Below, piece after piece: positions 15,801-45,955 of a DNA stretch of 64,000 bases. Each line of letters begins with the position of its first letter. Within the stretch, counting starts at the first letter, position 1. The DNA comes from Macrostomum hystrix (lineage: Eukaryota; Animalia; Platyhelminthes), in NCBI GenBank assembly GCA_950097015.1, contig CATNEN010000005.1, positions 5,084,001 through 5,148,000 of the forward strand. Reading direction: 5' to 3'. Made by a program: the position numbers and the translations under genes. Under the pieces are notes generated by a model. The model saw only the letters and a list, made by a program, of their open reading frames with translations, was not told the DNA's origin and did no database searches.

Positions 15801-18800
15801 TTACTCTTGATTAATTAATAATGCTCTGTTTAAAACTATTTTTAGAAGCTTATCGGCCATTTGAAAAATCCGCCTAAAAAAGCATAATGGGTTTGAGAAA
15901 GGCCCTTCGCAAGCAGGCTCAGGATGCATATAGTAAGTTATTTTTCTCTAGCTGGTTTTTGGGCATAGACAGATCCTAGAGAAGATCAAATTTATTTTAG
16001 CGTTCAATGTGGCTATGAATAATCTTATTGGTAATTAAGATGTGTCAGCAGTAAGATTGTAATAGGAAACTACTTTTATTAGGGATTATATTATAGTTAA
16101 ATAGACAAAACGTGACAAAAGTTGCCACATTTTTTGGATTGTTAACATTTTAGATGCAGCAGGGTTTCATGGCCGCGTCCAATGGAAGAAGTTGCCTATA
16201 ATTGGCCAATTCGAACCATGGTTATGCGATCCTACATGGATGACAATGGAGTCTATTAAAGCGGCACTTTCGAGCCCTATCGTATTCCATCCATCAAGAT
16301 CAGGTCTTAGTTTTAGTTCTTACTTCTTACTTAGCTAAACTTACTTACTTACTAACTAAACTAAACTAAACTAAACTAAACTAAACTAACTAATAAACTA
16401 AACTTACTTCTTAGTTTAGCGCACAATATGAAGTTATTTCGTTATTTACACTGCTTTACTTTACCGATTTATACGATAAAGGTGATTTTAATTAGTGCAG
16501 AGAAGTTTGAGTGCTTTGAAATATCGTCTAGCTGTTTCCGTTTATTCACTGACTGATTTATCCTTATTTTAAAATCATGACTCAATTTAAACTAGCCGTT
16601 TTGTTTAATTTCTTATTTCTCTCCAGTTCCAATCGACGTAAGCGAACCCGAAGGCAACGAAGACCATATCGACCAATCAGAAGACCTTGACTGGCCGAGC
16701 TCCGGCGGTCCGCACTTCGGTGTGCCGAGCTCCAGTGGGCCTAGAGGCGGTGGGCCTAGTGGCGGCGGGCCGAACTCCAGCGGGCCTAGAAGCGGTGGGC
16801 CGAACTCCAGCGGGCCTAGAAGCGGTGGGCCTAGTGGCGGCGGGCCGAACTCCAGCGGGCCTAGAGGCGGTGGGCCTAGTGGCGGCGGGCCGAACTCCAG
16901 CGGGCCTAGAAGCGGTGGGCCGAACTCCAGCGGGCCTAGAAGCGGCGGGCCGAACTCCAGCGGGCCTAGAAGCGGCGGGCCGAACTCCAGCGGGCCTAGA
17001 GGCGGTGGGCCTAGTGGCGTCGGGCCGAACTCCAGCGGGCCTAGAGGCGGCGGGCCGAACTCCAGCGGGCCTAGAGGCGGCGGGCCGAACTCCAGCGGGC
17101 CTAGAAGCGGTGGGCCTAGTGGCGGCGGGCCGAACTCCAGCGGGCCTAGAAGCGGTGGGCCTAGTGGCGGCGGGCCGAACTCCAGCGGGCCTAGAGGCGG
17201 TGGGCCTAGTGGCGGCGGGCCGAACTCCAGCGGGCCTAGAAGCGGTGGGCCGAACTCCAGCGGGCCTAGAAGCGGCGGGCCGAACTCCAGCGGGCCTAGA
17301 AGCGGCGGGCCGAACTCCAGCGGGCCTAGAGGCGGTGGGCCTAGTGGCGTCGGGCCGAACTCCAGCGGGCCTAGAGGCGGCGGGCCGAACTCCAGCGGGC
17401 CTAGAGGCGGCGGGCCGAACTCCAGCGGGCCTAGAAGCGGTGGGCCTAGTGGCGGCGGGCCGAACTCCAGCGGGCCTAGAAGCGGTGGGCCTAGTGGCGG
17501 CGGGCCGAACTCCAGCGGGCCTAGAGGCGGTGGGCCTAGTGGCGGCGGGCCGAACTCCAGCGGGCCTAAAAGCGGTGGGCCGAACTCCAGCGGGCCTAGA
17601 AGCGGCGGGCCGAACTCCAGCGGGCCTAGAAGCGGCGGGCCGAACTCCAGCGGGCCTGAAAGCGGTGGGCCGAACTCCGGTGGACCAGGAAGCGGCGGGC
17701 CTAGAGGCGGCGGGCCGAACTCCAGCGGGCCTAGAAGCGGCGGGCCTGAAAGCGGTGGGCCGACAAGGGATGGGGATTTAGCTAATAATGTTTTGTATGA
17801 AGATGGAGAACTTTTTGTTCTTGCTGATTAATTATGCTTCTTAACATGGCGCGCAGCACAAAGTTATTTCGCAATATATATTTTACTGCAAAGTAGTTTG
17901 AGTGCTTTGAAACATGGTCTTGCTGTTTTGTATTAGATAATTTGTGATTTGATGATTTGTACGAGCTATGTAGAACTTTTTGTTTTTACTGATTAATTTT
18001 GCTCGTTTCGGGTGGGTGCGGTGGGTGGTAATTGAGGGTGGGTGCCGGGTCCCCTCAGTCCATGGACTGAACAGCCGTTCGCAGCCTTCAGGTGCGCCGC
18101 GCAGTAGCTGCCAGCTGTGCTGTCGGATGCACATGTGGCAAGATTGGGACAGGCGTCATCGATTATTATTAAAAATATTATTATCATCGTAGTGCGAGTG
18201 CACACAAAGTCTTGCACTTTTGAATCCACCACCAAAAATTAAAACGGCAATATTGTTTTCGTGACCTAGACAAGGCACGCAATTTATGTTATCAATGTTT
18301 GAACAGAATGTGCAGCTGAAGAGAATTAAAAAAAATGCTTCCTGTTTTCCACTTCTTTCAAGTACAAACTAAAAAACTGTCGAGGCAGATTGAGAGGCGG
18401 CGGATAGCAGTACATGTGCCACGGATGGTCGTATGCGACCGGCCAAATTGTCGACCAACTGCACGGATCGTAAACGAGTATACTGGGCAGCGGCAGCTTT
18501 AATAATCCAACTCTCCCTCACCCCAACCAAAGGCTTAGCACCTTGCGCGTTGTGCGAATTGCGCAAGTTACAATACTGCGGAGAGGGAAATGGATCACTA
18601 GTTGGGATGAGTGAGTTATTCAGGGTGGACACGCGCAGGTTTCAATTGCGCAAGTTGTGATAGGAGGGAGAAATTGCTCACTTGCTCATGTGAACACTTT
18701 TCAATGTCCAATAGTGTAACGCTGACAATATCAAAGCGTAGCTTTTAACAGATATTAAGGGATAACTCTGATATCATAGCCTAGCACTGGTAGTAGGTTA

Positions 18801-21800
18801 GTTTTAGGGTAGATTGTACAGATTCGATTTTAGGATATTGGGATTTAGGGAAGTGCTTAGAAGATAAAAACATTTACGTGGGGAACTTTTAGTGACAATC
18901 GTATACTAAAATAGTTGCTTACAAAAATAGTAGGGGCATTAAAACAGTAAACGCTTATTCTTCCTTTTAATAATATACTTTATCGATACTCACGGCTGCA
19001 TCTTATTCGTCCGTCCGTTATTTATAAGATCGGAGGTTTTGTCTGCACATCTGTTCTCGAGATGTCGGTTTTCGAGCAGTCAGATTTTTTTACATTTTCC
19101 ATGAAATTAGGTAAAGAGAAGGTAAATTCCTAAGGTGAGTTCTGTACCGCTGGCTTAGCCGACCAACACCTAGAATCATGCTGATGATGCGTTCCTTGAT
19201 ACACAAACAACCATGAGCTGTAAACTTTGGCACGAGGACCATTAGTAAAAGGGATGTTACACTACTCATAAGCATAAAAGGATATGAAAAAATGAAATGC
19301 CGCCTTCGGCAAAACCGGGCGACCAGACTTGGGGTAAACCCCGAACCCGGAACCCGACCCGGACCCAAAAACCGACCCGACCCCGAACTTTACCCGACTA
19401 TCTCCTGGACTTGGAGTGATGGCTAAGAAGAGTACTTGTCTTAAAATACCGCCTTTTCCTTTTTCTACTTTTCTATTGTTAACTCTTCTCCCCCACTATC
19501 ACTACACTACTCGACTCCTCGGACAGTCGTACTCTTCACTTTACCCTCTACTCCTGAAAGCCTCAGGCAGGTTTGTATGTTAAAAATTCAGATTTAAGTT
19601 GCTGACGTGGGATTACATAGCTAACGAAGTAAAAAGAAAACATAATTAAAGACCATTTAAAGACATAATGCAGAATTAGGATGAGCTGTTTAGACTTTAG
19701 AAATATGTATATCTATATGTATGTATTATAATTCAAGGCCTAAAATTCGTAGAATGATTTATATACATTAGAATGACTAAGGCATCACGATTATTAATTC
19801 ATTAGTGCAGTGCAAATTACGCCAGTTCAGTTTAAGAAAAAAATATTTTTGAAATGGCGCGATTTCGAAAGACGCTTTATCACGTAATAAGGCAATACTT
19901 AAATAAAACTGATAATAATAAAAACACCGGAAACCTGAACCCGGTACCAAAACCCGACCCGAAAACCCGAACCCGAACACCCAACCCCGAACCTCGAACC
20001 CGACCCGGACATCTACACCCGAACCCGGTACCAAAACCAAGAGCAAGAAAACTGAGAAACTTCAATTCTAGACTTCATTTGCTTTCAAAGACTATAGTCT
20101 GAAGCTACATGTATACTGCATACGAGGGGGTTAAAAAGTTTTGCCGTTGACTACTTTGAGAAGCCACTTCTACTCTTCGAGAAGAAGCTAAAAGTTTGGG
20201 GAATCAAAGGTTCGGATCCATGCACCCATGAAAGCTCGTCGAGAGGCATTTCTAGAAGGCAATGCGCATGACACTTGTTCTGCGACCGCACTGGACCCCT
20301 TACGATCGAGCTTATGCAGGAGCCTGACACAAGCATCAATTCTGATCGCTACATGTACATGTACTGAAGGATGCATGACATTCAAAACAAGCGTCACAGA
20401 GACACCAAGCCCTTCATTCTCCATCACGATAATGCAATAACACACACTGCTCAGAAGACCACTGAGGCTGTCACAAGGCTCAAACCTTCTGCCACACCCG
20501 CCATACTCGGCCAATTAGCTTTGCTCGACTGGCTCACTACAGTCTGCAGCAGCAAGCACCAGGACGCAGGTGTCGAGCGGCGCTTCGTGCCGCCCTTCCT
20601 GCGTTCCTCCCGTACATGTACTTTTGTGTCTCAACCCCTTGCCCAGTGTATTTGCAATTACCCCCACCAGCCCAATCCGGTTCTCCGGTTTGTCTGGCCC
20701 TCGGCTTAGCCAGGCAGGCCGCTGATTGGCTGCAAACACTTATTTTCTCGACGCTCTAATTCTCTTCTTCGCCTCTCGGCTCTACTGCAGCCTGCCCCAA
20801 CCCCAACACCCAACTCGGGGTGGCTAAGCCCCACTCCTCCCCTTCTCACCTCCATGGATGCGAGGCTGGTGCGAGCCAATTTTGCGTCTGCCACCCCCTG
20901 GCAATGTCATTGGCTGGAGGGCGCAGCCCGGCCCCGCCCCTGCTCTGATTCTCTCGCCCCTCCCCGCCACTATTTATTTGTGCGCTCCGCTCGCCATGCC
21001 ATAACGCGCTCTCGACCGCCCTACCCTGCTTAATTGCTCCGGAAAACTTGGTTTGACGCGCGGTCTCTTACTCCGACGAATCAAATCGATTACCTAAGAT
21101 CAGATTTTGACACTTAGAAGAACCACACAGTGCATTGCGGTGAGCGCAGGCACAGAGCAGAGGATTGCCAATAATACTGAGCAGTCAGCGCGTGCACGAC
21201 CTGCACTACTAGCCCGAGACGCGATTTATGAGCTCCCGGTAAGATTCGACTTTCCGCGTTTATTATTTCACCTGGTTGTTCTCATTGCTCGAGCGTCTTC
21301 GGTTATTTACGTTACGTTCGATGGAGTCCGAGTGGCCGTCTGCTCACTCGACACTTTTATTATCCGTTATTTCGATCATTATTGTCTGCAAAGTGTCCGT
21401 ACGCCTCCAGGCTTTTGCTTACCCTAACACTCTGTAGTGCACAAGACCGACTGCAGGTGAGATGGCCAGGCAGATGCTGAGGTTCTGACCGCGCTGACCA
21501 TTCACAGTCGCATTGGTTCTGTCCGATTGAGATGTCCAACCCAGCAGAAATTGCAGAAATTGCTTGCAAACTTGCCTAACTAGCATGCAAAAAGGTACGG
21601 TATAGTCGAACTCCACAGCTTAATTACAGTGAATGAGACTAGGCAAATATGCATTTACGTGTCAATTCCGATATTCATGGTAGATCGGCTACTGCTAGTA
21701 GTTAAGCAGAATTATGAAAAAAACGAAGGCGCATTAACACTGCCTTTTAGGGTTTGACATTTGGTTTGTTGTTACTTTTTAGCAAAGTAACTGCGACCAT

Positions 21801-24800
21801 ATCCAATCAATTTTCAAAATGGACGCGAATTCTCGCTTCTCTCGCCACTGTGGCATAAGAATTGTGCTCAAAGTAACAATTATTATTAACTAAATCGCAG
21901 CACTGAAAACAAAAGTAATAAAATAGCGCGCTAGTGAGTAGATTCACAAAGTTGTTTTGATGTAAATCCACAGTCAGCAAGAAATACAAGAAATACAATT
22001 TTCCGTATTAAGGAAGATTGTACTGCAACAATATAAATGGGAACTGTAGGAAGTAATTGTGCACACCAATAACACATCGAAAAAATTTCTTCTGTTGCAG
22101 TTAAATGAGTTAGAAAATAACAGAAAGAAAAAAACTTTTATCTTGCACGACACCGTAAAATCAATGCATTTGTGCGATCACATCAACGCATTGAAACCGC
22201 AGGTCTTCAAGGACATGGCGACAATGGGAAAGCAAGCCTGTTTTGCCTTGTAACGACTCGATTTCTTGATAGAGCCGTAACTGCAGACGCGAAGCTTCTT
22301 CGCGGATCAGATTTTTCTCCTCACCTATTCGGGAAAATAGAGACGAAGCTTCGATCATGAGAAGACGATACCGTGCAGCAGGTTCAGATAGAGACACGCC
22401 GCAGTAGACATCGGCCGTTGGATTGTAATATGTGGCCAGAGGTTCCCGTGAAAATTGTGGCAGATCCTTGGACCAAATGGCCGCCATTTCGCGCTGAACA
22501 ACAGACAATCGCGCGATGTACACCTTGGCGTCGCTTTGTGCACTGCATTGGCGAAGGCTTGCATACAAGCGCAGCCGCTCAACAGCTCCGCACCGAAGGC
22601 GCTCTAATGGAGTCAGCGGAGAGGATTCTTCTTCAACTAAATACTCCTGAAGGTGCAGCTGTCCTCGTAGAAATAGCTGGTGCGGCTCACGATCTGAAAA
22701 ATATGATTTCATTGCACGACTGTTTTATTGCTTTACTCACGCGAGACAACCGCAATTAAGGCAGTGTGTTACCTTCTGGAAGCAATTTCTGCAAGAGACT
22801 GGTCAGAGACGCCGAGTGCCTGCGCAGCAAACGAAGTCTGTTTTGCAGCCATTTCCCTGGAGTGGAGGAAGTTGAAAAAAATTCTTTCAATAAATCGGCG
22901 CCCATAAATGATAACCGCCATCGAATAACTGAATAAATGACATCCATTTTTAATACATTTGCTGTCAAAAGTTGAGGATATATACATTTTCAACCTTTAA
23001 ACTGAGAAAATATGCGACAGAGAACAGAGAGATAGCATTAAAGTAAAAGGACAAAAAATTAAACACTGACCACATTCCAGTAAGTGACTGACATTCGAAC
23101 GCCAAATGTAATGAGCTAGAGTGTAAGTGCGGTGGTCAATGCGCATCTCCTTTAACTGTGGGCCGTATGGTCGGAACGATGAATTCAACCTCTCACAGTG
23201 TTCGCCATCGGTTAGGCCGCAGCCTTCAACGAATCTAACTGAGTTTTTTAGCTGAAATATGAAATAATAGGAATGATATGTGGCAAAAAATATAATGTAC
23301 AATCAAAACTATTTTCTTTCTTGTTTTGGTACGAACAAATGTAATACGAAATTTATAAATGAGACACAAAATACATACTCGGCAGGATGTCTTGTGAGCG
23401 AATGCATGAAAGGCGTTTACAGCAGGAACAATGGTTACATATGGATAGTCAGCCGCGATCTGCTGCAATCGACGGAACATCTTGCAGGCAATGTCATAGA
23501 CAAAGATGACTACCCCATTTACGCCACTTGCTTCCAAGAAGTATCGAAGACATTGTTCAGCGTATACAAGGCGTTCTCCTGGCGATCGGATGTCAGCGCA
23601 TGAAACTATAATTGAGTGGCGACAGGAGAGCATGAAGAGTCCGTTAACATCAAGGGCTCTTGAAGAAATTCTCCGAGTGACTGAGCCAGCTTGAAAATTC
23701 GAACACGAAGCAGTATCTTCGCCAGCTTCCTTGGGATCGACATCAACATGAATAAAAGGTGCCGGAAGACGACCATCGAGTGGTGATGGACACAGCTGCT
23801 GACCAGCCCGGCGTCTGTGACGCAAACCCATGCACCCATCTCCTGTGACGATTGTTGTGGACGGCAACGAACCTGGAGTGTTCTGAATAATTTGACGGAT
23901 CCGCGATTTAAATTTTACAACAATTATTGATTCGTGTATACATGCGAATGCTTGCATTTTAGTAAATTTCAACAGTGATCTAATTAAGAGCAGCAATTTA
24001 GAAATTAGACACCGTAGCTGGGGTAGCAAATTTTAGACACAATGTGCACTTCGTCTATCGTCTTTCCTAAGGAAAACCTGCTCAATTTCGAAAAACAGTA
24101 GCAAGTTATTATTCACTGCATCTGGACACAACAAGTAACCGGTCGGCCAAGGAAGCACATCGCGAAGAAGTTGCCTATATCTTTTAAGCACATCGTTTCG
24201 ACGAAGAGCATCGTATAAATGCAGCCATGTCTGGAAACGAAAATATTTTTCCAATTGTTATCGGCTTTGAGTTTGTTGGTAAAACGCTCTATACTTAACC
24301 ATATTTATATTTTAAGATACTATCCCATTTTTAGTATATAGGACTAGAAGATACAAGTTTTTTATAACTTACGCGCTGTCGACCCTCAGTGATATTATCA
24401 AACGTAAGCAAGCAGCGCACAGCTCGTAGAAGTGACATCTTTCCGTCGGATGTGAGACAATCGAGCATATCCAGAAGTCTCTTGTGAATGAATTTGTCGG
24501 AACTAACTTTTGTAACAGGAAAGTAGCCCGCAATAAGCATAGCATCGTTAATAGAACATTCCGCACAAAGATGAACTGACACAAAGATGCGATCTAAAAT
24601 GATATTGCCCCAGAATGTAAATACGTAAAACAATGTTAATACGGGTAGCACCATCGCAATACACAGCAAATGTTAAAAATTACGTACGACCAAGATGGTC
24701 GTATACATTAGCAGACGTGCTACTATGTAAATCCTCTCGGGAATTAACACAGCAATGAATGACAGGCCGCTCAGCAGGAGTAGAGTCTTGGTACATCTCT

Positions 24801-27800
24801 CCCTATAATGAGTTTGAAGAGTAAACGAAAGTCACATCCACGACATAAGAAGATGCACTTTCATATGAAGTTATGAACAGTCAACTTACATTCCACTCGG
24901 TAAATTTGTGCACCAGAAAGGTGCCATGCGTATCTTTCATACAATCCGAGCAGAATTTGCTGGCGCATGTAGTACAATATACGAAACCATCATTCATGCA
25001 GCGGCAGCACGGCTGTAGAATAAATTGCTTTAGACAAGCAGACGACTGCTGCTCAATAACTGGTTCTTCTCGCTCCCAGTCCTGTAGAGGCTGCTGCAAC
25101 TTTGGTGATGCTGCCACGGAATCTACGACGTCCCAGTCCCTTTCTGCATGATCTGATACATGATCTGCTACAGAATGCTGAGAAGCTGCGGATTCCTGAC
25201 TGCTTTGAGTAGTTTGCCGGTTAAAGTTGGCTCTAGCGACATTATAGGGCAGAAAGAGTGAACCACGGCCGCGGCGCCGCGATACTCGGATGCCAAGATT
25301 TACTGAACGAGGAAACTGAAATAAAATAAAGCATAAGAAAACTACAGTAAGGAAAAAGGAACAAAGTAGTGCTACAGCAGGGCAGGGGCTGGTGGTGGGG
25401 CAGGGGCAGGACTACTGCAGGGTTTGGGCAGGGGATGGGACTGGGCAGGGGCAGGGGGTTTGGGGCAGGGGCAGGGACAGGGGGTTGGGGCAGGGGCAGG
25501 GGGTTGGGGCAGGGGCAGGGACAGGGGGTTGGGGCAGGGGCAGGGACAGGGGGTCGGGGCTGGAGCAGGGGCAGCGGCTGAGGCTGGGTCTAGGGCAGGG
25601 GTAGGGCATCGGTAGAGGCAAGGGGTGGGGTAGGGGCCAGACAAGGGCAGTGCGAAAGTTGGACAGGGGCAGGGGCAGGGGCAGAGCAGGGTCCGTGTCA
25701 TATAAAGGGAACATAATAAATGACTTCGTTAAATCCAGCTTTATAGGCCACAGCTTGTAGTATATAAATATAACCTTCTAGCTAGTGGTTGGTATAGCTA
25801 CCCTGGTAAGGTTGGCAGGTTGCTCATAACTGGAGATTTATCTTAATTTAAGTAATTAAATGAAATATGAATTGTATCTCATTTGTCATATAATAGTTTA
25901 GGAAATCAAATAGATATAGCCTTATTTAATCACTTCGAAATAGTGCCTCGGTTAGCAATATAAAATCATAAACCAAGTTTAATAAATTATTCTTTATAAT
26001 AAATTATAAAGAAAAAAAGTATTCTTGTATAAATACTGGACTGGACTGGATAGCTAGCTAGGACTAGAAAGCTAGGGAGGCAAGATAGGACTAGACAGCT
26101 AGTGGGGGGGCAGGATAGCTAGCTAGGACTGGACAGCTAGGGGGGCAGAAAAGCTAGCTAGGAATGGACAGCTAGGGGGCAGGATAGCTATCTAGGGGGG
26201 GCAGGATAGCTATCTAGGGGGGGCAGGATAGCTAGCTAGGGGGGCAGGATAGCTAGCTAGGGGGGCAGGATAGCTAGCTAAGGGGGGCAGGATAGCTAGC
26301 TAGGGGGGCAGGATAGCTAGCTAGGGGGGCAGGATAGCTAGCTAGGGGGGCAGGATAGCTAGCTAGGGGGGCATGATAGCTAGCTAGGACTGGCCAGCTA
26401 GGGGGGGCAAGATTTCTAGCTAGGACTGGACAGCTAGTGGGCAGGATAGCTAGCTAGGGGTGGCAGGATAGCTAGCTAGGACTAGGCAGTTGGGGGGCAC
26501 TGGGCACAATAGCTAGCTAGGACTGGACAGCTAGGGGGCAGGATAGCTAGCTAGGACTGGACAGCTAGGGGGGCAGGATTGCTAGCTAGGGGGGGCAAGA
26601 TTGCTAGCTAGGACTGGACAGCTAGTGGGCAGGATAGCTAGCTAGGGGGGGCCTGGATAGCTAGCTAGGACTGGCCAGCTAGGGGGGGGGCAAGATTTCT
26701 AGCAAGGACTGGACAGCTAGTGGGCAGGATAGCTAGCTAGGGGTGGCAGGATAGCTAGCTAGGACTAGGCAGTTAGGGGGGCACTGGGCACAATAGCTAG
26801 CTAGGACTGGACAGCTAGGGGGCAGGATAGCTAGCTAGGACTGGACAGCTAGGGGCCAGGATAGCTAACTAGGACTGGCCAGCTAGGGGGGCAAGATTGC
26901 TAGCTAGGACTGGACAGCTAGGGGGCAGGATAGCTAGTTAGGACTAGACAGCTAGGGGGGCAAGATTGCTAGCTAGGACTAGACAGCTAGGGGCAGGATA
27001 TCTAGGAGGACTAGAGGGCTGGGTAGCGAGGAGGACTGGATAAATATAGTATATATATATGTTATACTTTATATTGTAAAATGTATTTAATACTAATATA
27101 GATAATGTCTCTAAATTAACAAATATGACTAGATCATAACATAAAAAGCTATTTGGTAGTTTAGAACAATTCAATAAATTTTCTTCATGCAAATGAGTGC
27201 CATATAATTTTTTATATAACTACTAACTAGCATTTATAATAACAAAAAAGCTATAACTAAACAGTATTTATATAATTTATCAGCACATTATTGGATAAAT
27301 AGATCAAATGTTTAGAAAATATATCATGCCTAGGCATAGCCTAGCTTGATTTCTACTTAACAAAAGTTTCACATCAGAAAAAGCCCATAAAGCTAAAGAA
27401 CCTGAGTTAATAGTTAATTCCTGTAACCTGTTACTACAACTTTCTAATCTAGCAAGTAGTAATATAGTGGCTTTACTGTTACATTACAAGAAAATTCATA
27501 TTCGACAAAAAGCAATCTTCAACTTCACCATACAATGTAAGTCACATCTATGTATAGCTTTAAAGCAACTGACTAGCTTGTAAATTCTGCAAGTAACATC
27601 AAACCTGATAATGAATCATATACCAGTGCCAGCCCCGTGCTGATGAATTTTAAATTCGTTTTTATTCAAACAGCACTTTAAAACAAAGTCGTATTTCAAA
27701 ATTTAGGATTTTTAACAGGTTAAACAAAACACAATAAATCGCTTAATTTCTAGCCTTGCTGCATTGAAGTACTAGTTAGTTAAAACAGATGAGCTTTTTC

Positions 27801-30480
27801 CGGTCTAGTCCATAGAAGAAAGCTTAACAGACGAGCTTTTTCCAGGCTAGACGGGAGATATTTTAAGCTTTTTCCCCGTCTAGACCTCTGCCGTCGGGTG
27901 GTGGGGCAGACAGAGGCAGGATTGACAGGGTGATAGGTTTGATTGATTGCCTCGAATTTTATGCACAGTTTCATCGTCTTCTTTTTTTCCTCTTTATTTT
28001 CAATCAGGAGGTTGCATCTTCCCATGCAGATGGCGCAAGCCTCATTCCACCTGAGGATTCGCGGCCTGATTCTACCAGTGCCGGTGTCAATGCCTGTGAC
28101 CCCATGCATTTATCAGCTATTAACGAGGCTTTCGACGAAAGTGAGGCTGATGAGTTCGACTACGCCGATCACTTGTCAACAGATGCGGAAGATGGGGACC
28201 CAGGCCAAACAGCAAAGCCATCATTGGAGAGCCTGAATGAGGAGCTTCTAATATTCTTCGTTCGTTACAACATCTCACATCGAGCGATGCAGTTCCTGCT
28301 CAATGCTCTAGTTTGCCGAGGCCTGCCGGTCGCAAGAACAGTGCACCGTCTGCGCAAAGAACCTTCGGCTGAAGCAGTACAAATACAAAAGTACACCATG
28401 GGTAGTGGACACTTTTCCTACATCGGTATTGCTTCGAACCTGGCGTTCCTGATTCGCGGCGGCATGTTGGATCTTGGAAATCCGGAAGCCACCCAGAATG
28501 ACAGAGCAAGGTTGGAACTGGACATTGATGTTGGCATTGACGGAATGCCGATTTACAATTCGTCAAACTACGCGGCATGGCCTATTATCGTTAAGTTTTC
28601 GAGATTCTGTCGCCCACTTCCTGTTGCTGTGTATGCTGGGTTGGGTAAACCACCTCTTACCGAGTACCTGGCCGACTTCATCAAGGAGCTGCAGTCCTTC
28701 ATGACCGACTTTGTCGAAGTTGATGGGGTGCTAATCCACATCAGGAACATCACGTTCATTTGCGACACGCCAGCGCGGTCCTTCATTACCGCAACTTTGG
28801 GCCACAACGCACATCACGGCTGCCCCTACTGCAGAGTGGTAGCCCAGACGGTCGACCGGCGAATAGTCTACCCTGTCGAAGTCGGAGAGTGTCGCACAGC
28901 TGAGGATTACCGTTTTAATAGGTGCGTGTGTGTGCATGGGGTTGTGTGTATGTGTGTGTGCTTTTGCGAATTTTGTATACCAGGTTATACATCTGTATAT
29001 GCCTACATGGCAGGATATCTGACATGTTTTTTACATGTCTACGAACCTGACCTGACGTTGTCTTAATACGTGAATCAGTTAATCATATAAATATGCAAAT
29101 GGCTGTATCGGGATATGGCAACTTAAGAAATGTGATTCCGATTCAGACTGTCTATATAATGGCTGTCCTTTTAAATCTCAAAAATTATTCACATACTTGC
29201 TATATACAATATAAAATATACAATATTCAATATACAATAATATACAATAGCTCGATTCCCGACTCCACGGAAAAAAATTGTGTCCTTTAGCAAGACACTT
29301 AACTCTGCAGTGCTTCGGTTCACCCAGCTGTTAAATAGGTACCAGCATTAGCTGGGGTAATTGAAGGTGGGTGTATGGCGTCCTCCCAGTCCATGGACTG
29401 AACAGCCGTACGCAGCCTTCAGATGCGCCGCGCATTAGCTGCGGCTGTGCTGTCGATTGGGGCAGGTGTAATCAATTATTATTATTACTTGTCTTTATCG
29501 CCAACAACTACTGCAGGGAATCCAACCAGCGGCATGAACCAAGTCCGCTCCTGTCACTGCCAGGCTTGCAACTACCTGATGCTTGCCCACCGGAGCCAAT
29601 GCACCTGCTCTTTCTAGGCGTCGCTAGGCGTCTTTTCACCTTCCTCTTTGCGGTGGATGACGGACGGCGGCGCAAAATTAGGCCGGATCAAGTTTCCGCA
29701 CTTTCTGATTTTGCCGAATCACGTGCTATATATACACCGACAAATTTCCAAAGACGCCCTCGGAGAATCGACCGAGAACTCGGACATTTCAAAGCCAGCG
29801 AGTTCCGCACGTGGACTCTGTATGTGGGCCCGTATTTTTTTCGCAAATTTCTGCCAACAGAGTTGTACAGGCATTTTCTTCTATTTCACTTTGCCTGTTA
29901 TGTTCTTTGCTCTGATAGCCCACAGCCTGAACTTCTTGATGCCGCTGAATCTGCCTTGAAACTTTTTGTGTATGACGCAGCTCAACTGTACGGCAACAGT
30001 TTCATGACTCACAATGCTCACGTTCTTTTGCACTTGTTTCAATACGCGAGGCAACGTGGAAATGTGTCCAACTTTTCGGCCTTTCCATATGAGAACTACC
30101 TCTCTCACTTAAAGGGTCGCCTTCGAGTAACGCGCTTTGTATCATCTTACTTGCTAAATCAAATGCTTTCACTTCGCGACTTACTAGTCAGCAACCCAAT
30201 TCAGCCCATTAAGTACTCTGTTAAGATGCCCGACAACTGTTGCATCGTGAATGGCTCAGTTGTTCGGATTACTTCTGTTCTTGGTGACCAAGTAACTGGC
30301 AATATTCTGTCGCTGCAAAAGGACTTGTATGACTATCCATATCCGTCCTCAAAACTGGGTATCGGAGTCTATTGTAAAACACGATCTTTTGTTACTGGCA
30401 CTCCCCACAGGAAGTGCTTTCTGTTTCCGCGCAAGACCGGAAAGGCATGGCTGGTGATTCCTCTCTCTGGTGTTGATTAG
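12867..30480 (+). CDS. CACTA/EnSpm (Transposase_21-like) transposase, 3 exons, 661 aa
   Basis: Exons 12867-12974 (donor GTGAGT), 28008-28921 (donor GTGCGT) and 29517-30480 join in frame. Motifs [62 protein letters not shown]. Intron 1 contains the KDZ element. Confidence 0.85.
13050..14900 (+). repeat. Left long TIR of the KDZ element, with CTAGCTAGCTATCCTGCCCCC tandem block (~14030-14900)
   Basis: Reverse complement of 26040-27900 apart from a few substitutions and indels. CTAG(A/C)C..GGAAAAAGCT motifs recur in the first ~110 bp. Confidence 0.9.
15105..17831 (+). CDS. Six-exon gene: HMG-box-like N-terminus, central domain, long [10 protein letters not shown] repeat tail; one 1-nt frameshift
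   Basis: Exons 15105-15153, 15446-15558, 15646-15765, 15846-15932, 16154-16303 and 16627-17831 are phase-compatible if one A is added to the A6 run at 15876-15881. N-terminus [39 protein letters not shown] resembles a shortened HMG box. Confidence 0.7.
18035..18160 (+). mobile_element. SINE family 2, 3' fragment
   Basis: CAGTCCATGGACTGAACAGCCG...GCTGTGCTGTCG shared with 29250-29470 and 35150-35350. Confidence 0.7.
19330..20040. repeat. Two clusters of ACCCGA/ACCCGG short repeats (~19330-19395 and ~19930-20040)
   Basis: Directly visible; resembles subterminal repeats of hAT-type MITEs, but no termini were found. Confidence 0.5.
20121..20530 (+). pseudogene. Degenerate, internally deleted mariner (Tc1/mariner) relic
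   Basis: TA-CGAGGGGGTTAAAAAGT mariner-like TIR start; [17 protein letters not shown] followed, after a frameshift, by LPHPPYS (mariner HDNA and PHPPYSPDL motifs). Confidence 0.75.
22161..25315 (-). CDS. Multi-exon KDZ transposase with N-terminal CxC2/CxC3-like cysteine cluster; first exon not located
   Basis: Exon 25315-24890 ([24 protein letters not shown]), then exons carrying [55 protein letters not shown] and [10 protein letters not shown], which are characteristic KDZ motifs. Not every junction was resolved. Confidence 0.88.
25372..25700. repeat. GGGGCA-based low-complexity repeat
   Basis: Visible (GGGGCA)n runs giving Pro/Cys or Gly-rich ORFs in several frames. Confidence 0.8.
26040..27900 (-). 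repeat. Right long TIR of the KDZ element, with GGGGGCAGGATAGCTAGCTAG tandem block (~26040-27010)
   Basis: Reverse complement of 13050-14900. Confidence 0.9.
29245..29470 (+). mobile_element. SINE family 2 copy (MetaSINE-like) in transposase intron 2
   Basis: Remnant B box (CGATTCCCGACTCC), then GTGTCCTTTAGCAAGACACTTAAC and CACCCAGCTGTTAAATAGGTACC, resembling the Meta-type central SINE domain as I recall it. Confidence 0.75.
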
Positions 30481-31136
30481 TGGAATCGCATTCTGTTCCA
30501 CCCTTGTCAGCAAATGTAATTTTGACTGTTAATGTTTTGCATCAATTTGACTACAGACATAAAAATGTACAAATGTAAAAAACTGTATACTCCCTGTATC
30601 CCTGTAAACTGTATACTGATATTGAGCAGCAAAGTCCGAATAGCAAAATAAATACCGGGAATCGGGAATGATAAGCGATAAGGTTTATTTGAGGCGGTGT
30701 GTGGTCTCCGATAACAGGAGTCCATTTTTCTTGCCGTCCGTTGCCTGAAGAACGCGTTGACACTTTAATGCCAAAACTTTGTTCTTTCGCACATTTTTAC
30801 GAAATTCTTAAATCGAATTTAATTTTATAGGGCATTCGAAAGCGTGTCATTATCTTCGTAATTGCTTTTATTGTACGCGTACTCATTGACTTAGAAGCTT
30901 AGTGTTTTAGCAACAAGCATGCTTCCAGAATCACTTAATTCCCATTAATTGAAGTGACTGCTAGAAACGGTAAACATCTAGCTAGTAGAGCTCTTCTGCA
31001 TGGTCACAGGACTTGCACGGCCAAAAGAGGAAGGAGCAGCTCAAATAAAAACTGATAAACTGATGACTGGTCTCCCCACCACAGACAGAAGGAAAGCCGG
31101 CCTTATCTTATCCATTTGGTCTGTGCTCCCAGAGAC

Positions 31137-31170
31137 TTCTAGAAATAACAACTTCTAGAAACTTCTAGAA
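31137..31170. promoter_or_regulatory. Heat-shock element (HSF site) upstream of the SET gene
   Basis: TTCtaGAAacTTCtaGAA at 31153-31170 is a perfect four-unit nGAAn inverted array; an extra TTCTAGAA lies at 31137-31144; 130 bp upstream of the ATG at 31300. Confidence 0.7.
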
Positions 31171-31299
31171 ATAAAAAGTCTGTGTGCTCCCCTCCCCACC
31201 CCACTTGATCGGTCCCACCCAAACCCGTTCAGAGTCATTACACACTACACAGGAAATTATTTTGCGATTTATTTTCATCACAAAAGTATTTAATATTTC

Positions 31300-32756
31300 A
31301 TGGATATGAGTGATCAGTGGCTAATATCTGACTGCGGAAGTGCAGACACAGCAGCGCCCGGTTTAAAAATTCGTTTAAAGCGCGTATCGACCGCCCTCAA
31401 TGAGGTGAGAATTCAGAGGCAGCAAATTATTTGAGATTGTAAAAAGTTTACAACTTTTCCTTTATTCTTTTGTTATATTTCTATTGTACACTCACGTATT
31501 GCACGCATACATTGCCAGACTTCCCAACGCGCTGATCAGGTCAGGGTGACCTGCGAAACTGGCCCGGGACTTATAGTCCGATTCAAGCGACATTCTTGCG
31601 CAATTCCATCAACGGCTGAACTTCAGGTGAATGATAATGTATGTTACCTGCCTGTTCAATAACTTGTCCTTCTAAGTATTCTCCTTCTCCCCTCTGCAAC
31701 TATAATCTCCCACTATAATCTTTGCATGTAGGCCCCGCGTCTTAATTTCTGTTATGCACATTCTCATGTTTCTGCATTAGAAAATATTAAAAATGTTTAA
31801 TTTTTCAGACTAACAAACGCGCTGTCCCTGAGGTCAACGTCGAATTATCCTTCTCCGACAGCGAGGAAGAGGGCGAAGGCAACTCACGCGTGGATCAATC
31901 TTTACGAATCGCCCTAGCAGTATGTCCATTAGAGGTTCGTCAATCAATTGAGTGCGGTTAGATGGTGTGGCTGTATAAAGCTGATTTTGGGGCAAAGTTT
32001 CCTTTTCTGTAATCGTTTTTCTTTGAGTAACTTAATGAGAGAGGAGAGGATTAAGAGGGAGTAAAAAGTAGAGGCCGATTAAGTGAGATGAGATGCAAAC
32101 GAGATGTCAGCAAGCAAGTGAAATGTGAGAGAGGCGATGGAGAAAAGGGCGATTTAGAAGCATGAAAAAAAAACAAATTAAATCGTGTTTAACTACACCC
32201 CCGCACAGCCTTTGCCTGACCCGACCGTTAAGAAGAGGCCGGCTCAGAGGCTCAGCCGATCTAGTGTCGATTATCGTCCCCCGACATCCACTAGAGATAC
32301 AACCGAGCGCATACTGGGCATCAACGGGAAGACAGACACCGCGATCGCTGTTGCACCTGCGGGCGAGAAGGGACTGGGCGCCTTTGCGAGAATCAACCTA
32401 GCTGCGGGGGCGTTTGTCGATCAATTCGCCGGAATCCTGCTGAACGAACAGGAAGCGATTATAGACGCGAATGTGAACCTAACTCCGACTGGATGCTATT
32501 TGAGTTTAAAGTTAACGGCAAATTATGGGTAATTGACGCCAGCAACAGTGACGGATTGGGAAGGTACCTGAACCATTCTTCTACTGCTCCTAACTGTAAA
32601 GCAAAGCTCATTATTATCGACCAGGGGCTGCGACCCGTCATTTATTTCGTGACAAATAAATATGTTGCAACGGGCACAGAACTGACGTTCGACTATACGA
32701 CTGGTAGAGGTATCGATAATGATGATCTTGTGAAGAACCCATGGCTTCGAGACTAG
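31300..32756 (+). CDS. PR-Set7/SETD8(KMT5A)-like SET-domain lysine methyltransferase, 4 exons, frameshifted near 32495
   Basis: Exons 31300-31404, 31519-31626, 31809-31919 and 32209-32756, all phase 0. Motifs GEKGLGAFA, GCY/FEF, IDAS, GRYLNHS, ELTFDY and C-terminal NPWL (SETD8 ends in HPWL). The frame breaks at TGCTATTTGAG. Confidence 0.85.
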
Positions 32757-32795
32757 AAAGACACGCATGTTATTATGACTCGTCGCTTAGTTTCT

Positions 32796-33560
32796 TCTAA
32801 TATACTAAAAATGAAATGGTTGCTTGCTTGCTTGTAATTGATTTTCTCCCGAACGGCTCAACCGATTTTCACCATTTCTTCACCAAAAGATGCCAAATAT
32901 GGGGACAATTTTACACGTATTTTTATTAAGCTTAACTTTATTGCTAAAGGGATTAAATATTCGAAAAACATGTTTTTTGACCATTTCAAAGGTCAAACTA
33001 TCTTGGCCTATTGAGAATTTCATTCACTGAATGCCACTGAGTTAGAATTGCATCATCAACTTGCGCAACACCCACTAGCTGACTGAGTTAAAAGCCTGCA
33101 CTCTGGAGACAAATTGGAAATAAATGTACACGACAAACCGCGAGACTACTGCGAGTGTACTCTTTTCTTACTTCATTGTACAAAGCCAGAACTTTGAGAA
33201 TTCATTTTATAAGGCTGATTTTTGCACCCACTAACCAACAGTCGGAATAGCCGATAGCCGATGTGTAGGCACTAGGAATAGTTTAGGCTAGGCTAGGGTT
33301 CGATTCTGCACTGCGTCAAATAATTTAGACTAATTTTCAGCCAGTAGTGACTGAAGATTATTTAAATTTATTTTTGTCACCACAACATTTTTATCATAGA
33401 TGATAAAATATCATCTATCAAAGCAAACCAGAGTTTAAATCATGGCTAAAGCAGAGTTTGAATCATGGCTAAACCAGAGTTTGAATCATGGCTAAACCAG
33501 AGATTGAATCATGGCTAAACCAGACTTTGAATCATGGCTAAACCAGAGTTTGAATCCTGA
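32796..33560 (+). mobile_element. Second copy of the Helitron 5' region with only ~6 units of the 23-bp repeat
   Basis: Starts TCTAATATACTAAAAATG; direct paralogue of 1941-2600; no matching 3' end found. Confidence 0.8.
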
Positions 33561-35149: not shown

Positions 35150-35350
35150 AATTTGTGTCCTTTAGCAAGAAACTTAATTAACTCTGCATTGATTTAGTTC
35201 ACCCTGCTGTTAAATGGTACCAGCATTCGCTGGGATAATTGAAGGTGGGTGTGGTGTCCCCCCAGTCCATGGACTGTACAGCTGTACGCAGTCTTCAGAT
35301 GAGCCGCGTAATAGCTGCAGCTGTGCTGTCGTCTGCACATCTGGCCCGAT
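35150..35350 (+). mobile_element. SINE family 2, headless copy
   Basis: GTGTCCTTTAGCAAGAAACTTAA...CCAGTCCATGGACTG...GCTGTGCTGTCG. Confidence 0.7.
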
Positions 35351-35849: not shown

Positions 35850-36152
35850 TATTGGGCCAGATGTGTAGCCGACAGCACAGCTGCAACTATTGTGCGGCGC
35901 ATCTGAAGACTGCGTACGGCTACGGACTGCAGCCAGTACAGTCCATCAACTGGGGGTAGGCTACACCCACTATAAGTTACCACAGCTACTACTGGTACCC
36001 ATATAATAGCTAGCTGAACTGAAGCAATTCAGAGGTAATTGCCTTTCTTAGAGACACAAATTTCAAATTGTTTCTTAAAGAAACAGGAGTCAGGAATCGA
36101 ACCATCAACCTTCAAGATGCGAGTCTGACGCTCTAACTGCTGGGCTACAACC
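35850..36152 (-). mobile_element. SINE family 2, near full length with tRNA-like head
   Basis: Minus strand GGGTTGTAGCCCAGCAGTTAGAGCG...GGTTCGATTCCTGACTCC (A and B boxes), followed by the family-2 body. Confidence 0.75.
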
Positions 36153-45714: not shown

Positions 45715-45955
45715 TTATTTCTGTGAGACTGCAAAAGTGACGGTTGCACATTCTAGAAAATATGACATCTGTGTGTTCTGTGAGACTACAAAAGTGACGG
45801 TTGCACATTCTAGAAAATATGACATCTGTGTGTTCTGTGAGACTACAAAAGTGACGGTTGCACATTCTAGAAAATATGACATCTGTGTGTTCTGTGAGAC
45901 TACAAAAGTGACGTTTGCACATTCTAGAAAATATGACATCTGTGTGTTCTGTGTG
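45715..45955 (+). repeat. 57-bp tandem repeat, about 4 copies
   Basis: TCTGTGAGACTACAAAAGTGACGGTTGCACATTCTAGAAAATATGACATCTGTGTGT repeated. Confidence 0.9.

What the first reader, a model, noticed from the sequence alone, without database searches (positions are those of the whole stretch)
30960..32756. SETD8/PR-Set7-like methyltransferase gene with a perfect heat-shock element, apparently carried by a transposon
Seen: a four-exon SET gene 820 bp downstream of the transposase stop, same strand, before the putative right terminus. A perfect TTCnnGAAnnTTCnnGAA array lies 130 bp upstream of its ATG. The N-terminus has a duplicated PGL(K/I)(I/V)R(L/F)KR motif in exons 1 and 2. Known: PR-Set7 writes H4K20me1, and HSF binds inverted nGAAn arrays. 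Inference: the element may carry its own stress-inducible chromatin writer, which could alter its chromatin state or counter silencing. I do not know of an HSF-driven SET cargo gene described for CACTA elements, but I cannot check the literature.
Basis: partly seen in the sequence, partly recalled or inferred. Interest (0 to 1): 0.85.

Follow-up and report, generated by a model that had tools for sequence, protein, structure and literature searches.

The report
Heat-shock-promoter SET8-like gene beside transposase
A real, spliced gene for a divergent PR-Set7/SETD8-like histone methyltransferase with a textbook heat-shock element in its promoter lies just downstream of an intact-looking CACTA-type transposase gene in a Macrostomum-type flatworm, but nothing I could test shows that a transposon carries it.

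Summary
The observation largely holds. A four-exon SET gene (ATG 31300, stop 32756) starts 820 bp after the transposase stop. A perfect TTCnnGAAnnTTCnnGAA lies 130 bp upstream, and both PGLxxRxKR motifs are present.

Corrections:
- Exon 3 ends at 31934; a spliced contig shows this.
- The frame break is an extra TA at 32460-61, not a break at "TGCY".
- The break is polymorphic. One public run (X3) has the same sequence without the TA, which gives an intact 294-aa ORF.

The protein groups with Macrostomum zinc-finger-SET proteins of SETD8 type, but it has no zinc fingers. It carries Phe at the Phe/Tyr switch.

The upstream gene is a CMC/EnSpm-type transposase with all catalytic motifs. A young 14.9-kb KDZ transposon sits in its first intron.

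Carriage by a transposon is not supported:
- I found no terminal inverted repeats or target duplication.
- The "CACTAC" end at 33349 belongs to an unrelated high-copy repeat.
- Transposase and SET lie at single-copy-like depth.
- SET paralogues at about 87% identity exist, with no transposase paralogues to match.

SET genes in transposons and heat-shock-element-driven transposons (including in M. lignano) are already published. Elsewhere in this genome the scan noted KDZ-linked ZnF-SET genes, but not this locus. Heat induction is testable with existing data.

The parts
31002..31205 (+). Promoter block 'R', a low-copy repeat (about two copies per genome) that holds the heat-shock elements and a TATA-like box. 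Its borders are approximate.
   Evidence: Contigs of X3 break at 31001 and restart at 31206. Depth is raised in bins 30968-31327. A variant with a 4-nt deletion at 31096 has about equal depth in X3 and X2. An X3 contig runs from 32793 back into 31003-31049. No second copy exists in the window.
31137..31170 (.). Heat-shock element array: TTCTAGAA, an 8-nt gap, then TTCTAGAAACTTCTAGAA (four perfect alternating nGAAn units).
   Evidence: It is the only array of three or more units in the 64-kb window.
31171..31178 (+). TATA-like ATAAAAAG directly after the heat-shock element, about 120 bp before the ATG (inferred core promoter).
   Evidence: Sequence. This is the architecture described for M. lignano Hsp20 and LTR promoters (10.1101/2024.12.18.629116). 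It was not tested here.
31300..31404 (+). SET gene exon 1 (35 aa, contains PGLKIRLKR).
   Evidence: ORF plus GT donor. The splice is predicted.
31519..31626 (+). SET gene exon 2 (36 aa, contains PGLIVRFKR).
   Evidence: AG/GT borders, phase 0. Predicted.
31809..31934 (+). SET gene exon 3 (42 aa, acidic stretch).
   Evidence: The 3' border is shown by spliced contig X9 record 28, which has 1 mismatch in 227 nt.
32209..32756 (+). SET gene exon 4: the whole SET domain to the stop codon. Key motifs are EKGLGAF, RYLNHS, LTFDY and NPWLRD.
   Evidence: Pfam SET; tblastn of homologues; alignment; the acceptor is shown by X9.
32460..32461 (+). Extra TA (TA to TATA) that shifts the frame in this assembly and in run X2. 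It is absent in run X3, where the ORF is intact (294 aa).
   Evidence: tables 4 and 8; translation; homologues change frame between 32457 and 32490.
12867..12974 (+). Predicted exon 1 of the CMC/EnSpm-type transposase gene (MSKRRTK...VVMDQ, then a gtgagt donor).
13043..27907 (.). KDZ transposon inserted in intron 1 of that transposase gene. It has TIRs of about 1.8 kb whose outer 626 nt are 99.7-100% identical, and a GTGGGGC target duplication. It contains no SET gene.
28008..28945 (+). Transposase exon 2 (3' border approximate). It holds D (GIDG), D (CDTPA) and CPYC.
   Evidence: ORF; Atlas look-alikes carry Transposase_21, score 0.94; several frame-compatible donors.
29252..29455 (.). SINE-like high-copy repeat in transposase intron 2.
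   Evidence: Depth is about 1000 times the flanks. Other copies lie at 35150-35331 and 18027-18125, and there is a 77% match in L003.
29517..30480 (+). Transposase exon 3 (5' border approximate). It holds HNAHVLLH and E (PYEN), then the stop codon.
   Evidence: ORF; Pfam DUF4218 at E 3e-4, below the cut-off; Atlas look-alikes carry DUF4218, Transposase_21 and Plavaka.
32797..33556 (+). Unrelated high-copy repeat that starts 40 bp after the SET stop and ends in a 23-bp satellite. It contains the CACTACTG at 33342-33349.

Best explanation
This is a lineage-specific, divergent member of the PR-Set7/SETD8 (KMT5A) family in a Macrostomum-type flatworm.

Shown:
- Its single-exon SET domain descends from the Macrostomum zinc-finger-SET family.
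- This gene has no zinc fingers. Instead it has three short 5' exons that encode two basic PGLxxRxKR motifs.
- The gene is transcribed and spliced.
- It has close paralogues whose differences are mostly synonymous.
- It is intact in some individuals. In the sequenced haplotype a TA slippage insertion knocks it out.

Inferred:
- The basic motifs look like nuclear localisation signals.
- The protein is a nuclear, AdoMet-dependent lysine methyltransferase. Phe at both product-specificity Tyr positions should allow more than monomethylation. H4K20 is assumed as substrate by homology only.
- The promoter block (three TTCTAGAA units abutting a TATA-like box) is built like the heat-shock promoters validated in M. 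lignano. HSF-dependent heat induction is therefore predicted.

The gene lies 820 bp downstream of, and on the same strand as, a single-copy, intron-bearing CMC/EnSpm-type transposase gene with intact catalytic motifs. I read that as neighbourhood in a very transposon-rich region, or at most as the remains of an old immobilised element, not as an active transposon carrying the gene. The family seems to have grown by local DNA duplication.
For: - Gene and domain.
- Splicing and expression: X9 record 28 removes 31935-32208 exactly at GT..AG.
- Intact allele: X3 record 14 has 0 other letters over 32196-32793 and lacks the TA at 32460. X2 record 8 is identical to the window.
- Clade: the gene groups with P0009 and the M. 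lignano L001 gene at 99/93 support. It is 42% identical to P0009 over 155 aa in one HSP across the repaired site. P0009 and L001 carry N-terminal C2H2-type fingers, and no such fingers are encoded near the gene in the window.
- SETD8 type: the top PDB hits of P0009 are all KMT5A, at E 1e-17 against 1e-11 for the next family.
- Selection: 11 of 16 listed paralogue differences are synonymous and 12 are at third codon positions.
- Heat-shock element. It is functional in this genus according to 10.1101/2024.12.18.629116.
- Not mobile as a unit: depth is flat at about 590-850 over the transposase and SET gene in X3. Extra contigs appear only over the SET unit. No TIR or TSD was found.
- Local duplication: an X3 contig runs from 32793 back into the R block.
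Against: - Adjacency to a catalytically intact-looking transposase on the same strand echoes the KDZ-then-ZnF-SET arrangement that I verified in M. lignano (L004). A transposon link for this SET family is therefore not excluded.
- Short TIRs, or ends outside the window, would escape my searches.
- Depth from Logan contigs is only a rough copy-number guide.
- Heat induction, enzymatic activity and substrate are all untested.
- Only intron 3 has transcript support.
- X9 is labelled RNA only by a guess.
- The list of paralogue differences is partial (143 more were not shown) and mixes several contigs.
Confidence: 0.6

Rival explanations
1. One reading: the SET gene is cargo of a CACTA/EnSpm-type DNA transposon, still mobile or recently immobilised. 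The element would bring its own heat-inducible chromatin writer.
For: - The gene lies on the same strand, 820 bp after the stop of a transposase with an intact D, D, C(2)C, H(3-4)H, E signature (signature as described in PMC12730594).
- The arrangement is the same in runs of two labelled organisms.
- Related ZnF-SET genes lie 2 kb downstream of a KDZ transposase in M. lignano.
- SET cargo is known in HarbingerS and MuDR elements.
Against: - No TIRs or TSD were found with three search designs. Candidate pairs were no better than a reversed-sequence null.
- The CACTACTG at 33349 belongs to another repeat family.
- The transposase is single-copy at 85% identity or more, while the SET unit has paralogues.
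- The closest M. lignano relative has no transposase nearby.
- The region is packed with unrelated transposons, so adjacency is weak evidence.
Confidence: 0.2
2. The gene is a decaying duplicate with no function. The heat-shock element would be an accidental by-product of a 10-bp tandem duplication of a palindrome.
For: - The window and X2 carry the frameshift.
- The heat-shock element is 2.2 copies of a 10-bp unit.
- One expressed paralogue has NHS changed to NQS.
- The M. lignano relative L001 has two stop codons.
Against: - An intact allele with no other difference exists.
- There is a spliced transcript.
- Differences from the paralogues are strongly biased towards synonymous changes.
- All AdoMet-binding and catalytic motifs are kept.
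- The heat-shock element abuts a TATA-like box at the spacing expected for a promoter.
Confidence: 0.12
3. The heat-shock promoter block R is itself transposon-derived, for example a fragment or solo LTR of one of the heat-shock-element-bearing LTR retrotransposons of Macrostomum, and was co-opted as the promoter of the SET gene. This concerns the origin of the promoter and is compatible with the best explanation.
For: - R is a discrete repeat of about 200 bp with about two copies and sharp borders. In X3 a second copy follows the gene.
- LTRs with heat-shock element plus TATA are documented in M. lignano.
- The scan noted such LTRs in this genome (unchecked notes).
Against: - There is no TG..CA pair with a target duplication.
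- There is no primer-binding-site-like TGG after R, and no purine tract before 32793 (sequence).
- R has no similarity to anything else in the window.
- I could not compare R with the published LTRs.
Confidence: 0.2

Closest known systems
PR-Set7 / SETD8 / KMT5A (C. elegans SET-1), the H4K20 monomethyltransferase
   Same: The SET domain sits at the extreme C-terminus and ends in (N/H)PWL(K/R)x, with no Cys-rich post-SET region. The GxG, RxxNHS and ELxxDY motifs are kept. The sister protein P0009 matches solved KMT5A structures best.
   Different: Identity to canonical family members is only 30-37%. The gene sits in a separate, well-supported Macrostomum clade. Phe replaces Tyr at the Phe/Tyr switch (LTFDY) and at the position of SETD8 Y245 (DQFAG). 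The N-terminus is unrelated. The gene has close paralogues and is not shown to be the 1:1 orthologue. Its substrate is untested.
Lineage-specific expansions of SETD8-like genes (Hydractinia, Hydra, sea urchin; PMC10368294)
   Same: Many divergent SETD8-type paralogues with new domain combinations exist next to one canonical gene. The top database hit here is a Holothuria model with eight SET stretches.
   Different: This is a flatworm clade. The ancestral form is a zinc-finger-SET fusion. Here the gene has a heat-shock-type promoter and a transposase as neighbour.
DNA transposons that encode chromatin or epigenetic enzymes: HarbingerS and MuDR with SET genes in oomycetes; KDZ, Plavaka, EnSpm and others with TET/JBP in fungi (PMC12730594)
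   Same: A cut-and-paste transposase gene sits with a chromatin-modifier gene directly downstream on the same strand.
   Different: Those elements have defined termini, target duplications and multiple copies that carry both genes. None of these was found here. The host is an animal and the SET type is SETD8-like.
Heat-shock-element-driven transposons: M. lignano Ty3/gypsy LTR retrotransposons (10.1101/2024.12.18.629116), ONSEN in Arabidopsis, Helitron1_CE in C. elegans (PMC6927752)
   Same: Canonical heat-shock elements lie just upstream of a TATA box, in the same genus where this architecture was shown to give strong heat induction.
   Different: Here the heat-shock element fronts a methyltransferase gene, not a transposon's own transcription unit. 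Induction is not tested.
SETMAR (primate SET gene fused to an Hsmar1 transposase)
   Same: A SET methyltransferase and a single-copy, immobile transposase gene lie side by side.
   Different: The order is reversed. These are separate genes with a stop codon and a promoter between them. The SET and transposase families both differ, and no fusion transcript was seen.

Membership tests
PR-Set7/SETD8/KMT5A-type SET proteins | SET domain detectable by profile | tested here: met
   Pfam PF00856 at E 5.4e-9, 36.9 bits (cut-off 22.4), on 32493-32753. The N-terminal half alone gave no Pfam or PDB hit, but it aligns with homologues.
PR-Set7/SETD8/KMT5A-type SET proteins | Closest solved structures are KMT5A rather than other SET families | tested here: inconclusive
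   The C-terminal piece alone gives a SET8-like protein (4ldg) as best hit, but KMT2 hits have similar E-values and KMT5A scores 3e-6. The clade sister P0009 over the whole domain gives all top hits as KMT5A, at 1.5e-17 against 9e-12 for EHMT2.
PR-Set7/SETD8/KMT5A-type SET proteins | Domain at the C-terminal end, closing with the PWL motif, with no Cys-rich post-SET region | tested here: met
   The protein ends ...LVKNPWLRD then stop. P345 and L347 are nearly invariant in the alignment.
PR-Set7/SETD8/KMT5A-type SET proteins | AdoMet-binding and catalytic residues (GxG, NHS, catalytic Tyr of DY) | tested here: met
   EKGLGA, RYLNHS and FDY are present. Phe sits at the Phe/Tyr switch and at the Y245 position; residue numbering is from my knowledge of SETD8.
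PR-Set7/SETD8/KMT5A-type SET proteins | 1:1 orthology with the host's canonical SETD8 | tested here: not met
   The gene falls in a separate clade with P0009 and L001 (99/93), outside the main SETD8 group. It has paralogues at 87% identity. The host's canonical gene itself was not available to me.
PR-Set7/SETD8/KMT5A-type SET proteins | Methylation of histone H4 Lys20 | not testable with these tools
   This needs an enzyme assay.
CACTA/EnSpm (CMC) transposon carrying cargo | Transposase with D, D, C(2)C, H(3-4)H, E in that order | tested here: met
   [21 protein letters not shown] and PYEN occur in the ORFs 27930-29066 and 29371-30480. The signature is as stated in PMC12730594. Atlas look-alikes carry Transposase_21 and DUF4218. 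Pfam DUF4218 scores only E 3e-4, below the cut-off.
CACTA/EnSpm (CMC) transposon carrying cargo | Terminal inverted repeats 5'-CAC(TA)...GTG-3' enclosing transposase and cargo | tested here: not met
   blastn with word size 7, a 16-mer scan and a CA..TG-anchored 12-mer scan found nothing above a reversed-sequence null. There is no CACTAC on the + strand left of the transposase. The one at 33349 is inside another repeat. Ends outside the window are not excluded.
CACTA/EnSpm (CMC) transposon carrying cargo | Target-site duplication of 2-4 bp | tested here: not met
   No ends were found, so there is no TSD.
CACTA/EnSpm (CMC) transposon carrying cargo | Several genomic copies that share transposase and cargo | tested here: not met
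   Depth is single-copy-like for both genes in X3. Paralogous contigs cover only the SET unit. This is a rough measure because it rests on contigs, not reads.
HSF-regulated (heat-shock) promoter | Three or more contiguous alternating nGAAn units | tested here: met
   There are four perfect units at 31153-31170 plus a further dimer at 31137-31144. The array is unique in the window.
HSF-regulated (heat-shock) promoter | Heat induction and HSF binding | not testable with these tools
   No RNA run holding the locus under heat stress was on offer. Published heat-shock RNA-seq exists.

The most novel reading that the evidence does not exclude
The transposase gene and the SET gene with its heat-shock promoter form one conserved two-gene module, either an immobilised or still mobile CMC/EnSpm-type element or a domesticated pair. 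It would be a second case, beside the KDZ-then-ZnF-SET arrangement, of Macrostomum DNA transposases travelling with SETD8-like chromatin writers. That would make it an animal transposon lineage that brings its own stress-inducible histone methyltransferase.
Probability: 0.15. Interest if true: 0.7.

Novelty: new member of a known kind. Interest (0 to 1): 0.4.

Why it matters
**If the heat-shock element works:** this would be a histone methyltransferase under direct HSF control, in an animal where such promoters can be tested by transgenesis. It would link heat stress to a chromatin mark in a genome whose retrotransposons already exploit the same pathway.

**A ready-made genetic contrast:** the natural intact and frameshifted alleles offer one.

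**The transposon-cargo idea:** it would extend SET-carrying DNA transposons from oomycetes to animals, but the evidence here does not support it for this locus.

Tried and rejected
- **Frameshift at TGCY.** I first placed it there because NLTPTGCY resembles SETD8's PSTGCY. I rejected this. The natural TA-less allele and the frame of the homologue alignments put the break at 32460, and the restored text (EAIRRECEPNSDWMLFEF) matches P0009 (DLREQEC..DPWYLFDF).
- **SET gene inside the neighbouring KDZ transposon.** There is none.
- **TIR and TSD searches.** Three designs gave nothing above the null.
- **R as an LTR pair around the gene.** I found no primer-binding-site or purine-tract features, so I did not pursue it.
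- **Exon 1 / exon 2 duplication.** There is no DNA-level similarity.
- **PGLxxRxKR as an H4-tail mimic.** Only KRH matches, so I dropped the idea.
- **The search for homologous proteins.**
  - The transposase query gave 1 hit.
  - A SET profile gave 3 hits.
  - P0169 found only itself.
  - The word filter saturated, so these blanks carry no weight.
- **P0037 and P0057.** These SET relatives lie on giant-virus-like contigs and are irrelevant here. P0027 (L009) is not a close relative.
- **The search of earlier findings by sequence.** Both look-ups were blank.
Full report
**1. What is in the sequence**

The + strand between 31300 and 32756 holds a four-exon gene. Its exons are 31300-31404, 31519-31626, 31809-31934 and 32209-32756. 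All borders are GT/AG and all introns are in phase 0.

Pfam finds a SET domain in the last exon (E 5.4e-9). This is the only SET-coding stretch in the 64-kb window.

The ATG lies 820 bp after the stop (30480) of the upstream transposase ORF.

TTCTAGAAACTTCTAGAA at 31153-31170 is the only match to TTCnnGAAnnTTCnnGAA in the window, and none of 100 shuffles gave a match. It is also the only array of three or more nGAAn units. A third TTCTAGAA lies 8 nt upstream. The array runs directly into ATAAAAAG, a TATA-like box about 120 bp before the ATG. Tandem Repeats Finder shows the perfect part is 2.2 copies of a 10-bp unit, which gives its perfection a simple origin.

The motifs PGLKIRLKR (exon 1) and PGLIVRFKR (exon 2) are there. 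The two exons share no DNA-level similarity.

**2. Evidence from public runs**

Organism names were coded. I laid 27908-33300 (5,393 letters) on four runs at 85% likeness or more.

(a) A 227-nt contig of X9 (kind guessed as RNA) has one mismatch and joins 31932/34 to 32207/09. That removes an intron with GT at 31935 and AG at 32208. So the gene is transcribed and spliced, and exon 3 ends at 31934.

(b) X3 record 14 covers 32196-32793 with no substitution but lacks two letters at 32460, the TA of gatTAtagac. Removing them joins the two reading frames into one 294-aa ORF.
- X2 record 8 (another labelled organism) is identical to the window, including the extra TA.
- Homologues align in the second frame from 32448/32463.
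- With the TA removed, the protein aligns to its nearest relative in one block across the site.
- The frameshift is therefore a recent slippage variant that differs between samples, not old decay.

(c) In the deep DNA run X3, transposase and SET lie at flat depth (about 590-850), one contig each. The SINE at 29252-29455 and the repeat from about 32797 reach 10^5 to 10^6.

(d) Extra contigs at about 87% identity cover parts of the SET unit only: exon 1, intron 3 with deletions, and the SET domain. They appear in X3, X5 and X9 but not in X2.
- Of the 16 listed differences, 11 are synonymous and 12 are at third codon positions. This argues for purifying selection. The list is partial.
- One paralogue has NHS changed to NQS.

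(e) Contigs break at 31001 and 31206. A variant of the block between them, with a 4-nt deletion at 31096, has about equal depth. X3 record 14 continues from 32793 into 47 letters that match 31003-31049.
- The promoter block R therefore exists about twice.
- In X3 its second copy follows the gene, which suggests a tandem arrangement.
- The window has no second R or SET copy. I could not resolve this difference.

**3. What the protein is**

The HMMER search of 1.8 billion cluster representatives found nothing above 51% identity. Named hits are SET-1 / SETD8-type proteins, and the best named one is a Macrostomum lignano fragment.

In a maximum-likelihood tree of 113 SET domains, the gene groups at 99/93 support with two sequences, outside the main SETD8 group:
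- P0009, from a Logan contig that shares the window's SINE at 77% identity.
- The M. lignano gene at L001/L002.

P0009 and L001 are intronless proteins with two C2H2-type fingers ahead of the SET domain. The window encodes no such fingers.

The best solved-structure matches of P0009 are all KMT5A, at 1.5e-17 against 9e-12 for the next family.

The window's protein keeps EKGLGA, RYLNHS and the catalytic Tyr of FDY, and it ends NPWLRD like SETD8. It has Phe where SETD8 has the Phe/Tyr-switch Tyr, and Phe where SETD8 has Y245. That numbering is from my knowledge of the SETD8 literature.

I conclude it is a divergent SETD8-type enzyme, probably able to add more than one methyl group. Its substrate is assumed, not shown.

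**4. The neighbouring transposase**

The ORFs 27930-29066 and 29371-30480 carry [21 protein letters not shown] and PYEN in this order. This is the D, D, C(2)C, H(3-4)H, E signature of the EnSpm-Mirage-Chapaev-Transib group as described in PMC12730594.

Atlas look-alikes carry Transposase_21 and DUF4218. Pfam DUF4218 itself is below its cut-off.

A first exon lies at 12867-12974. The intron after it holds a 14.9-kb KDZ transposon (13043-27907) with near-identical ends and a GTGGGGC duplication. The second intron holds a (GT)n tract and a SINE.

So this is a single-copy, intron-bearing, apparently intact transposase gene.

**5. Is the SET gene carried by that element?**

I found no support:
- Three TIR/TSD searches gave nothing above a null.
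- The only CACTAC-type end to the right (33342-33349) is inside a high-copy repeat. That repeat starts at about 32797 and recurs at 1946-2682 ahead of a 5-kb 23-bp satellite.
- The transposase has no paralogue at 85% or more, while the SET unit does.
- The nearest M. lignano relative sits between an ankyrin gene and an unknown gene in two duplicated loci, with no transposase within 10 kb.

One point keeps the idea alive. In M. lignano contig NIVC01000910 a KDZ transposase gene is followed 2 kb downstream, on the same strand, by the ZnF-SET gene P0169. This confirms an earlier scan note. I found no inverted repeats around that pair either.

Two same-strand pairings of a transposase followed by a SET gene are suggestive. 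In genomes this rich in transposons they are weak evidence.

**6. Literature**

- SET genes inside DNA transposons are known: HarbingerS and MuDR of oomycetes (Kojima and Jurka 2014, as cited in PMC12730594).
- Fungal KDZ, Plavaka and EnSpm elements carry TET/JBP genes (same paper).
- Canonical heat-shock elements before a TATA box drive strong heat induction of Ty3/gypsy LTR retrotransposons and of Hsp20 in M. lignano. This was shown by RNA-seq, qRT-PCR and a reporter transgene (10.1101/2024.12.18.629116).
- Heat-shock-element-bearing Helitrons are known in Caenorhabditis (PMC6927752).
- Large SETD8-like expansions are reported in Hydractinia, Hydra and sea urchin (PMC10368294).
- I found no paper on a Macrostomum SET8-like gene with a heat-shock promoter, or one beside a CMC transposase. 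The library is not exhaustive.

**7. Verdict**

The SETD8-like assignment holds at family level. The heat-shock promoter is a good, cheaply testable prediction.

The transposon-cargo reading is not supported for this locus. It also would not be a new kind of thing if it were true.

Interest is moderate.

Noticed in passing
window 12867-30480: A single-copy, intron-bearing CMC/EnSpm-type transposase gene has all catalytic motifs but no detectable TIRs. A 14.9-kb KDZ transposon sits in its intron 1 and a SINE in intron 2. It is a candidate domesticated or immobilised transposase.
   Followed up: partly
window 32793 and 31003-31049 (run X3): An X3 contig runs from the end of the SET unit (32793) back into 47 letters of the promoter block R. 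R has about two copies per genome, one of them with a 4-nt deletion at 31096. This suggests a tandem R-plus-SET array in that sample. The window has no second copy within 31 kb. Unexplained.
   Followed up: partly
window 32574-32576 (paralogue contigs in X3, X5, X9): A SET paralogue at about 87% identity, also seen in the probable RNA run X9, has the His of the NHS AdoMet motif replaced by Gln. It may be a catalytically impaired family member.
   Followed up: partly
window 32797-33556 and 1946-7490: A high-copy repeat (depth about 300 times single copy) ends in a 23-bp satellite. The upstream copy leads into a satellite array of about 5 kb. In this haplotype it starts only 40 bp after the SET stop codon, so the gene's natural 3' end may be disrupted.
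   Followed up: partly
window 29252-29455; also 35150-35331, 18027-18125, 35870-36063; L003:73-243: A SINE-like repeat has depth about 1000 times single copy. It matches at 77% on the Logan contig that encodes P0009, which ties that contig to a related flatworm.
   Followed up: partly
window 45751-45929: There are four copies of a 57-bp tandem unit, each holding one TTCTAGAA (a two-unit heat-shock half-site only).
   Followed up: no
L004:5145-12004 (M. lignano NIVC01000910): A KDZ transposase gene (830 aa) is followed 2 kb downstream, on the same strand, by a zinc-finger-SET gene (P0169). No inverted repeats enclose the pair within 22 kb.
   Followed up: partly
L001:9356-10282 and L002:6786-7712 (M. 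lignano): The nearest M. lignano relative of this SET gene is an intronless ZnF-SET gene present in two duplicated loci. It has two in-frame stops in the SET region, and only its last 94 aa are annotated.
   Followed up: partly
L005, L010: Short SET-only proteins (P0037, P0057) lie on densely packed contigs that carry a capsid-like gene and a DUF5906 gene, so the contigs look like giant viruses. In the tree they sit next to the KDZ-linked P0169, which may be a long-branch artefact.
   Followed up: no
P0001 (Holothuria leucospilota KAJ8048607.1): The best-scoring database protein is a 799-aa model with eight SETD8-like stretches. It is probably a tandem array of SET8-like genes merged into one gene model.
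   Followed up: no
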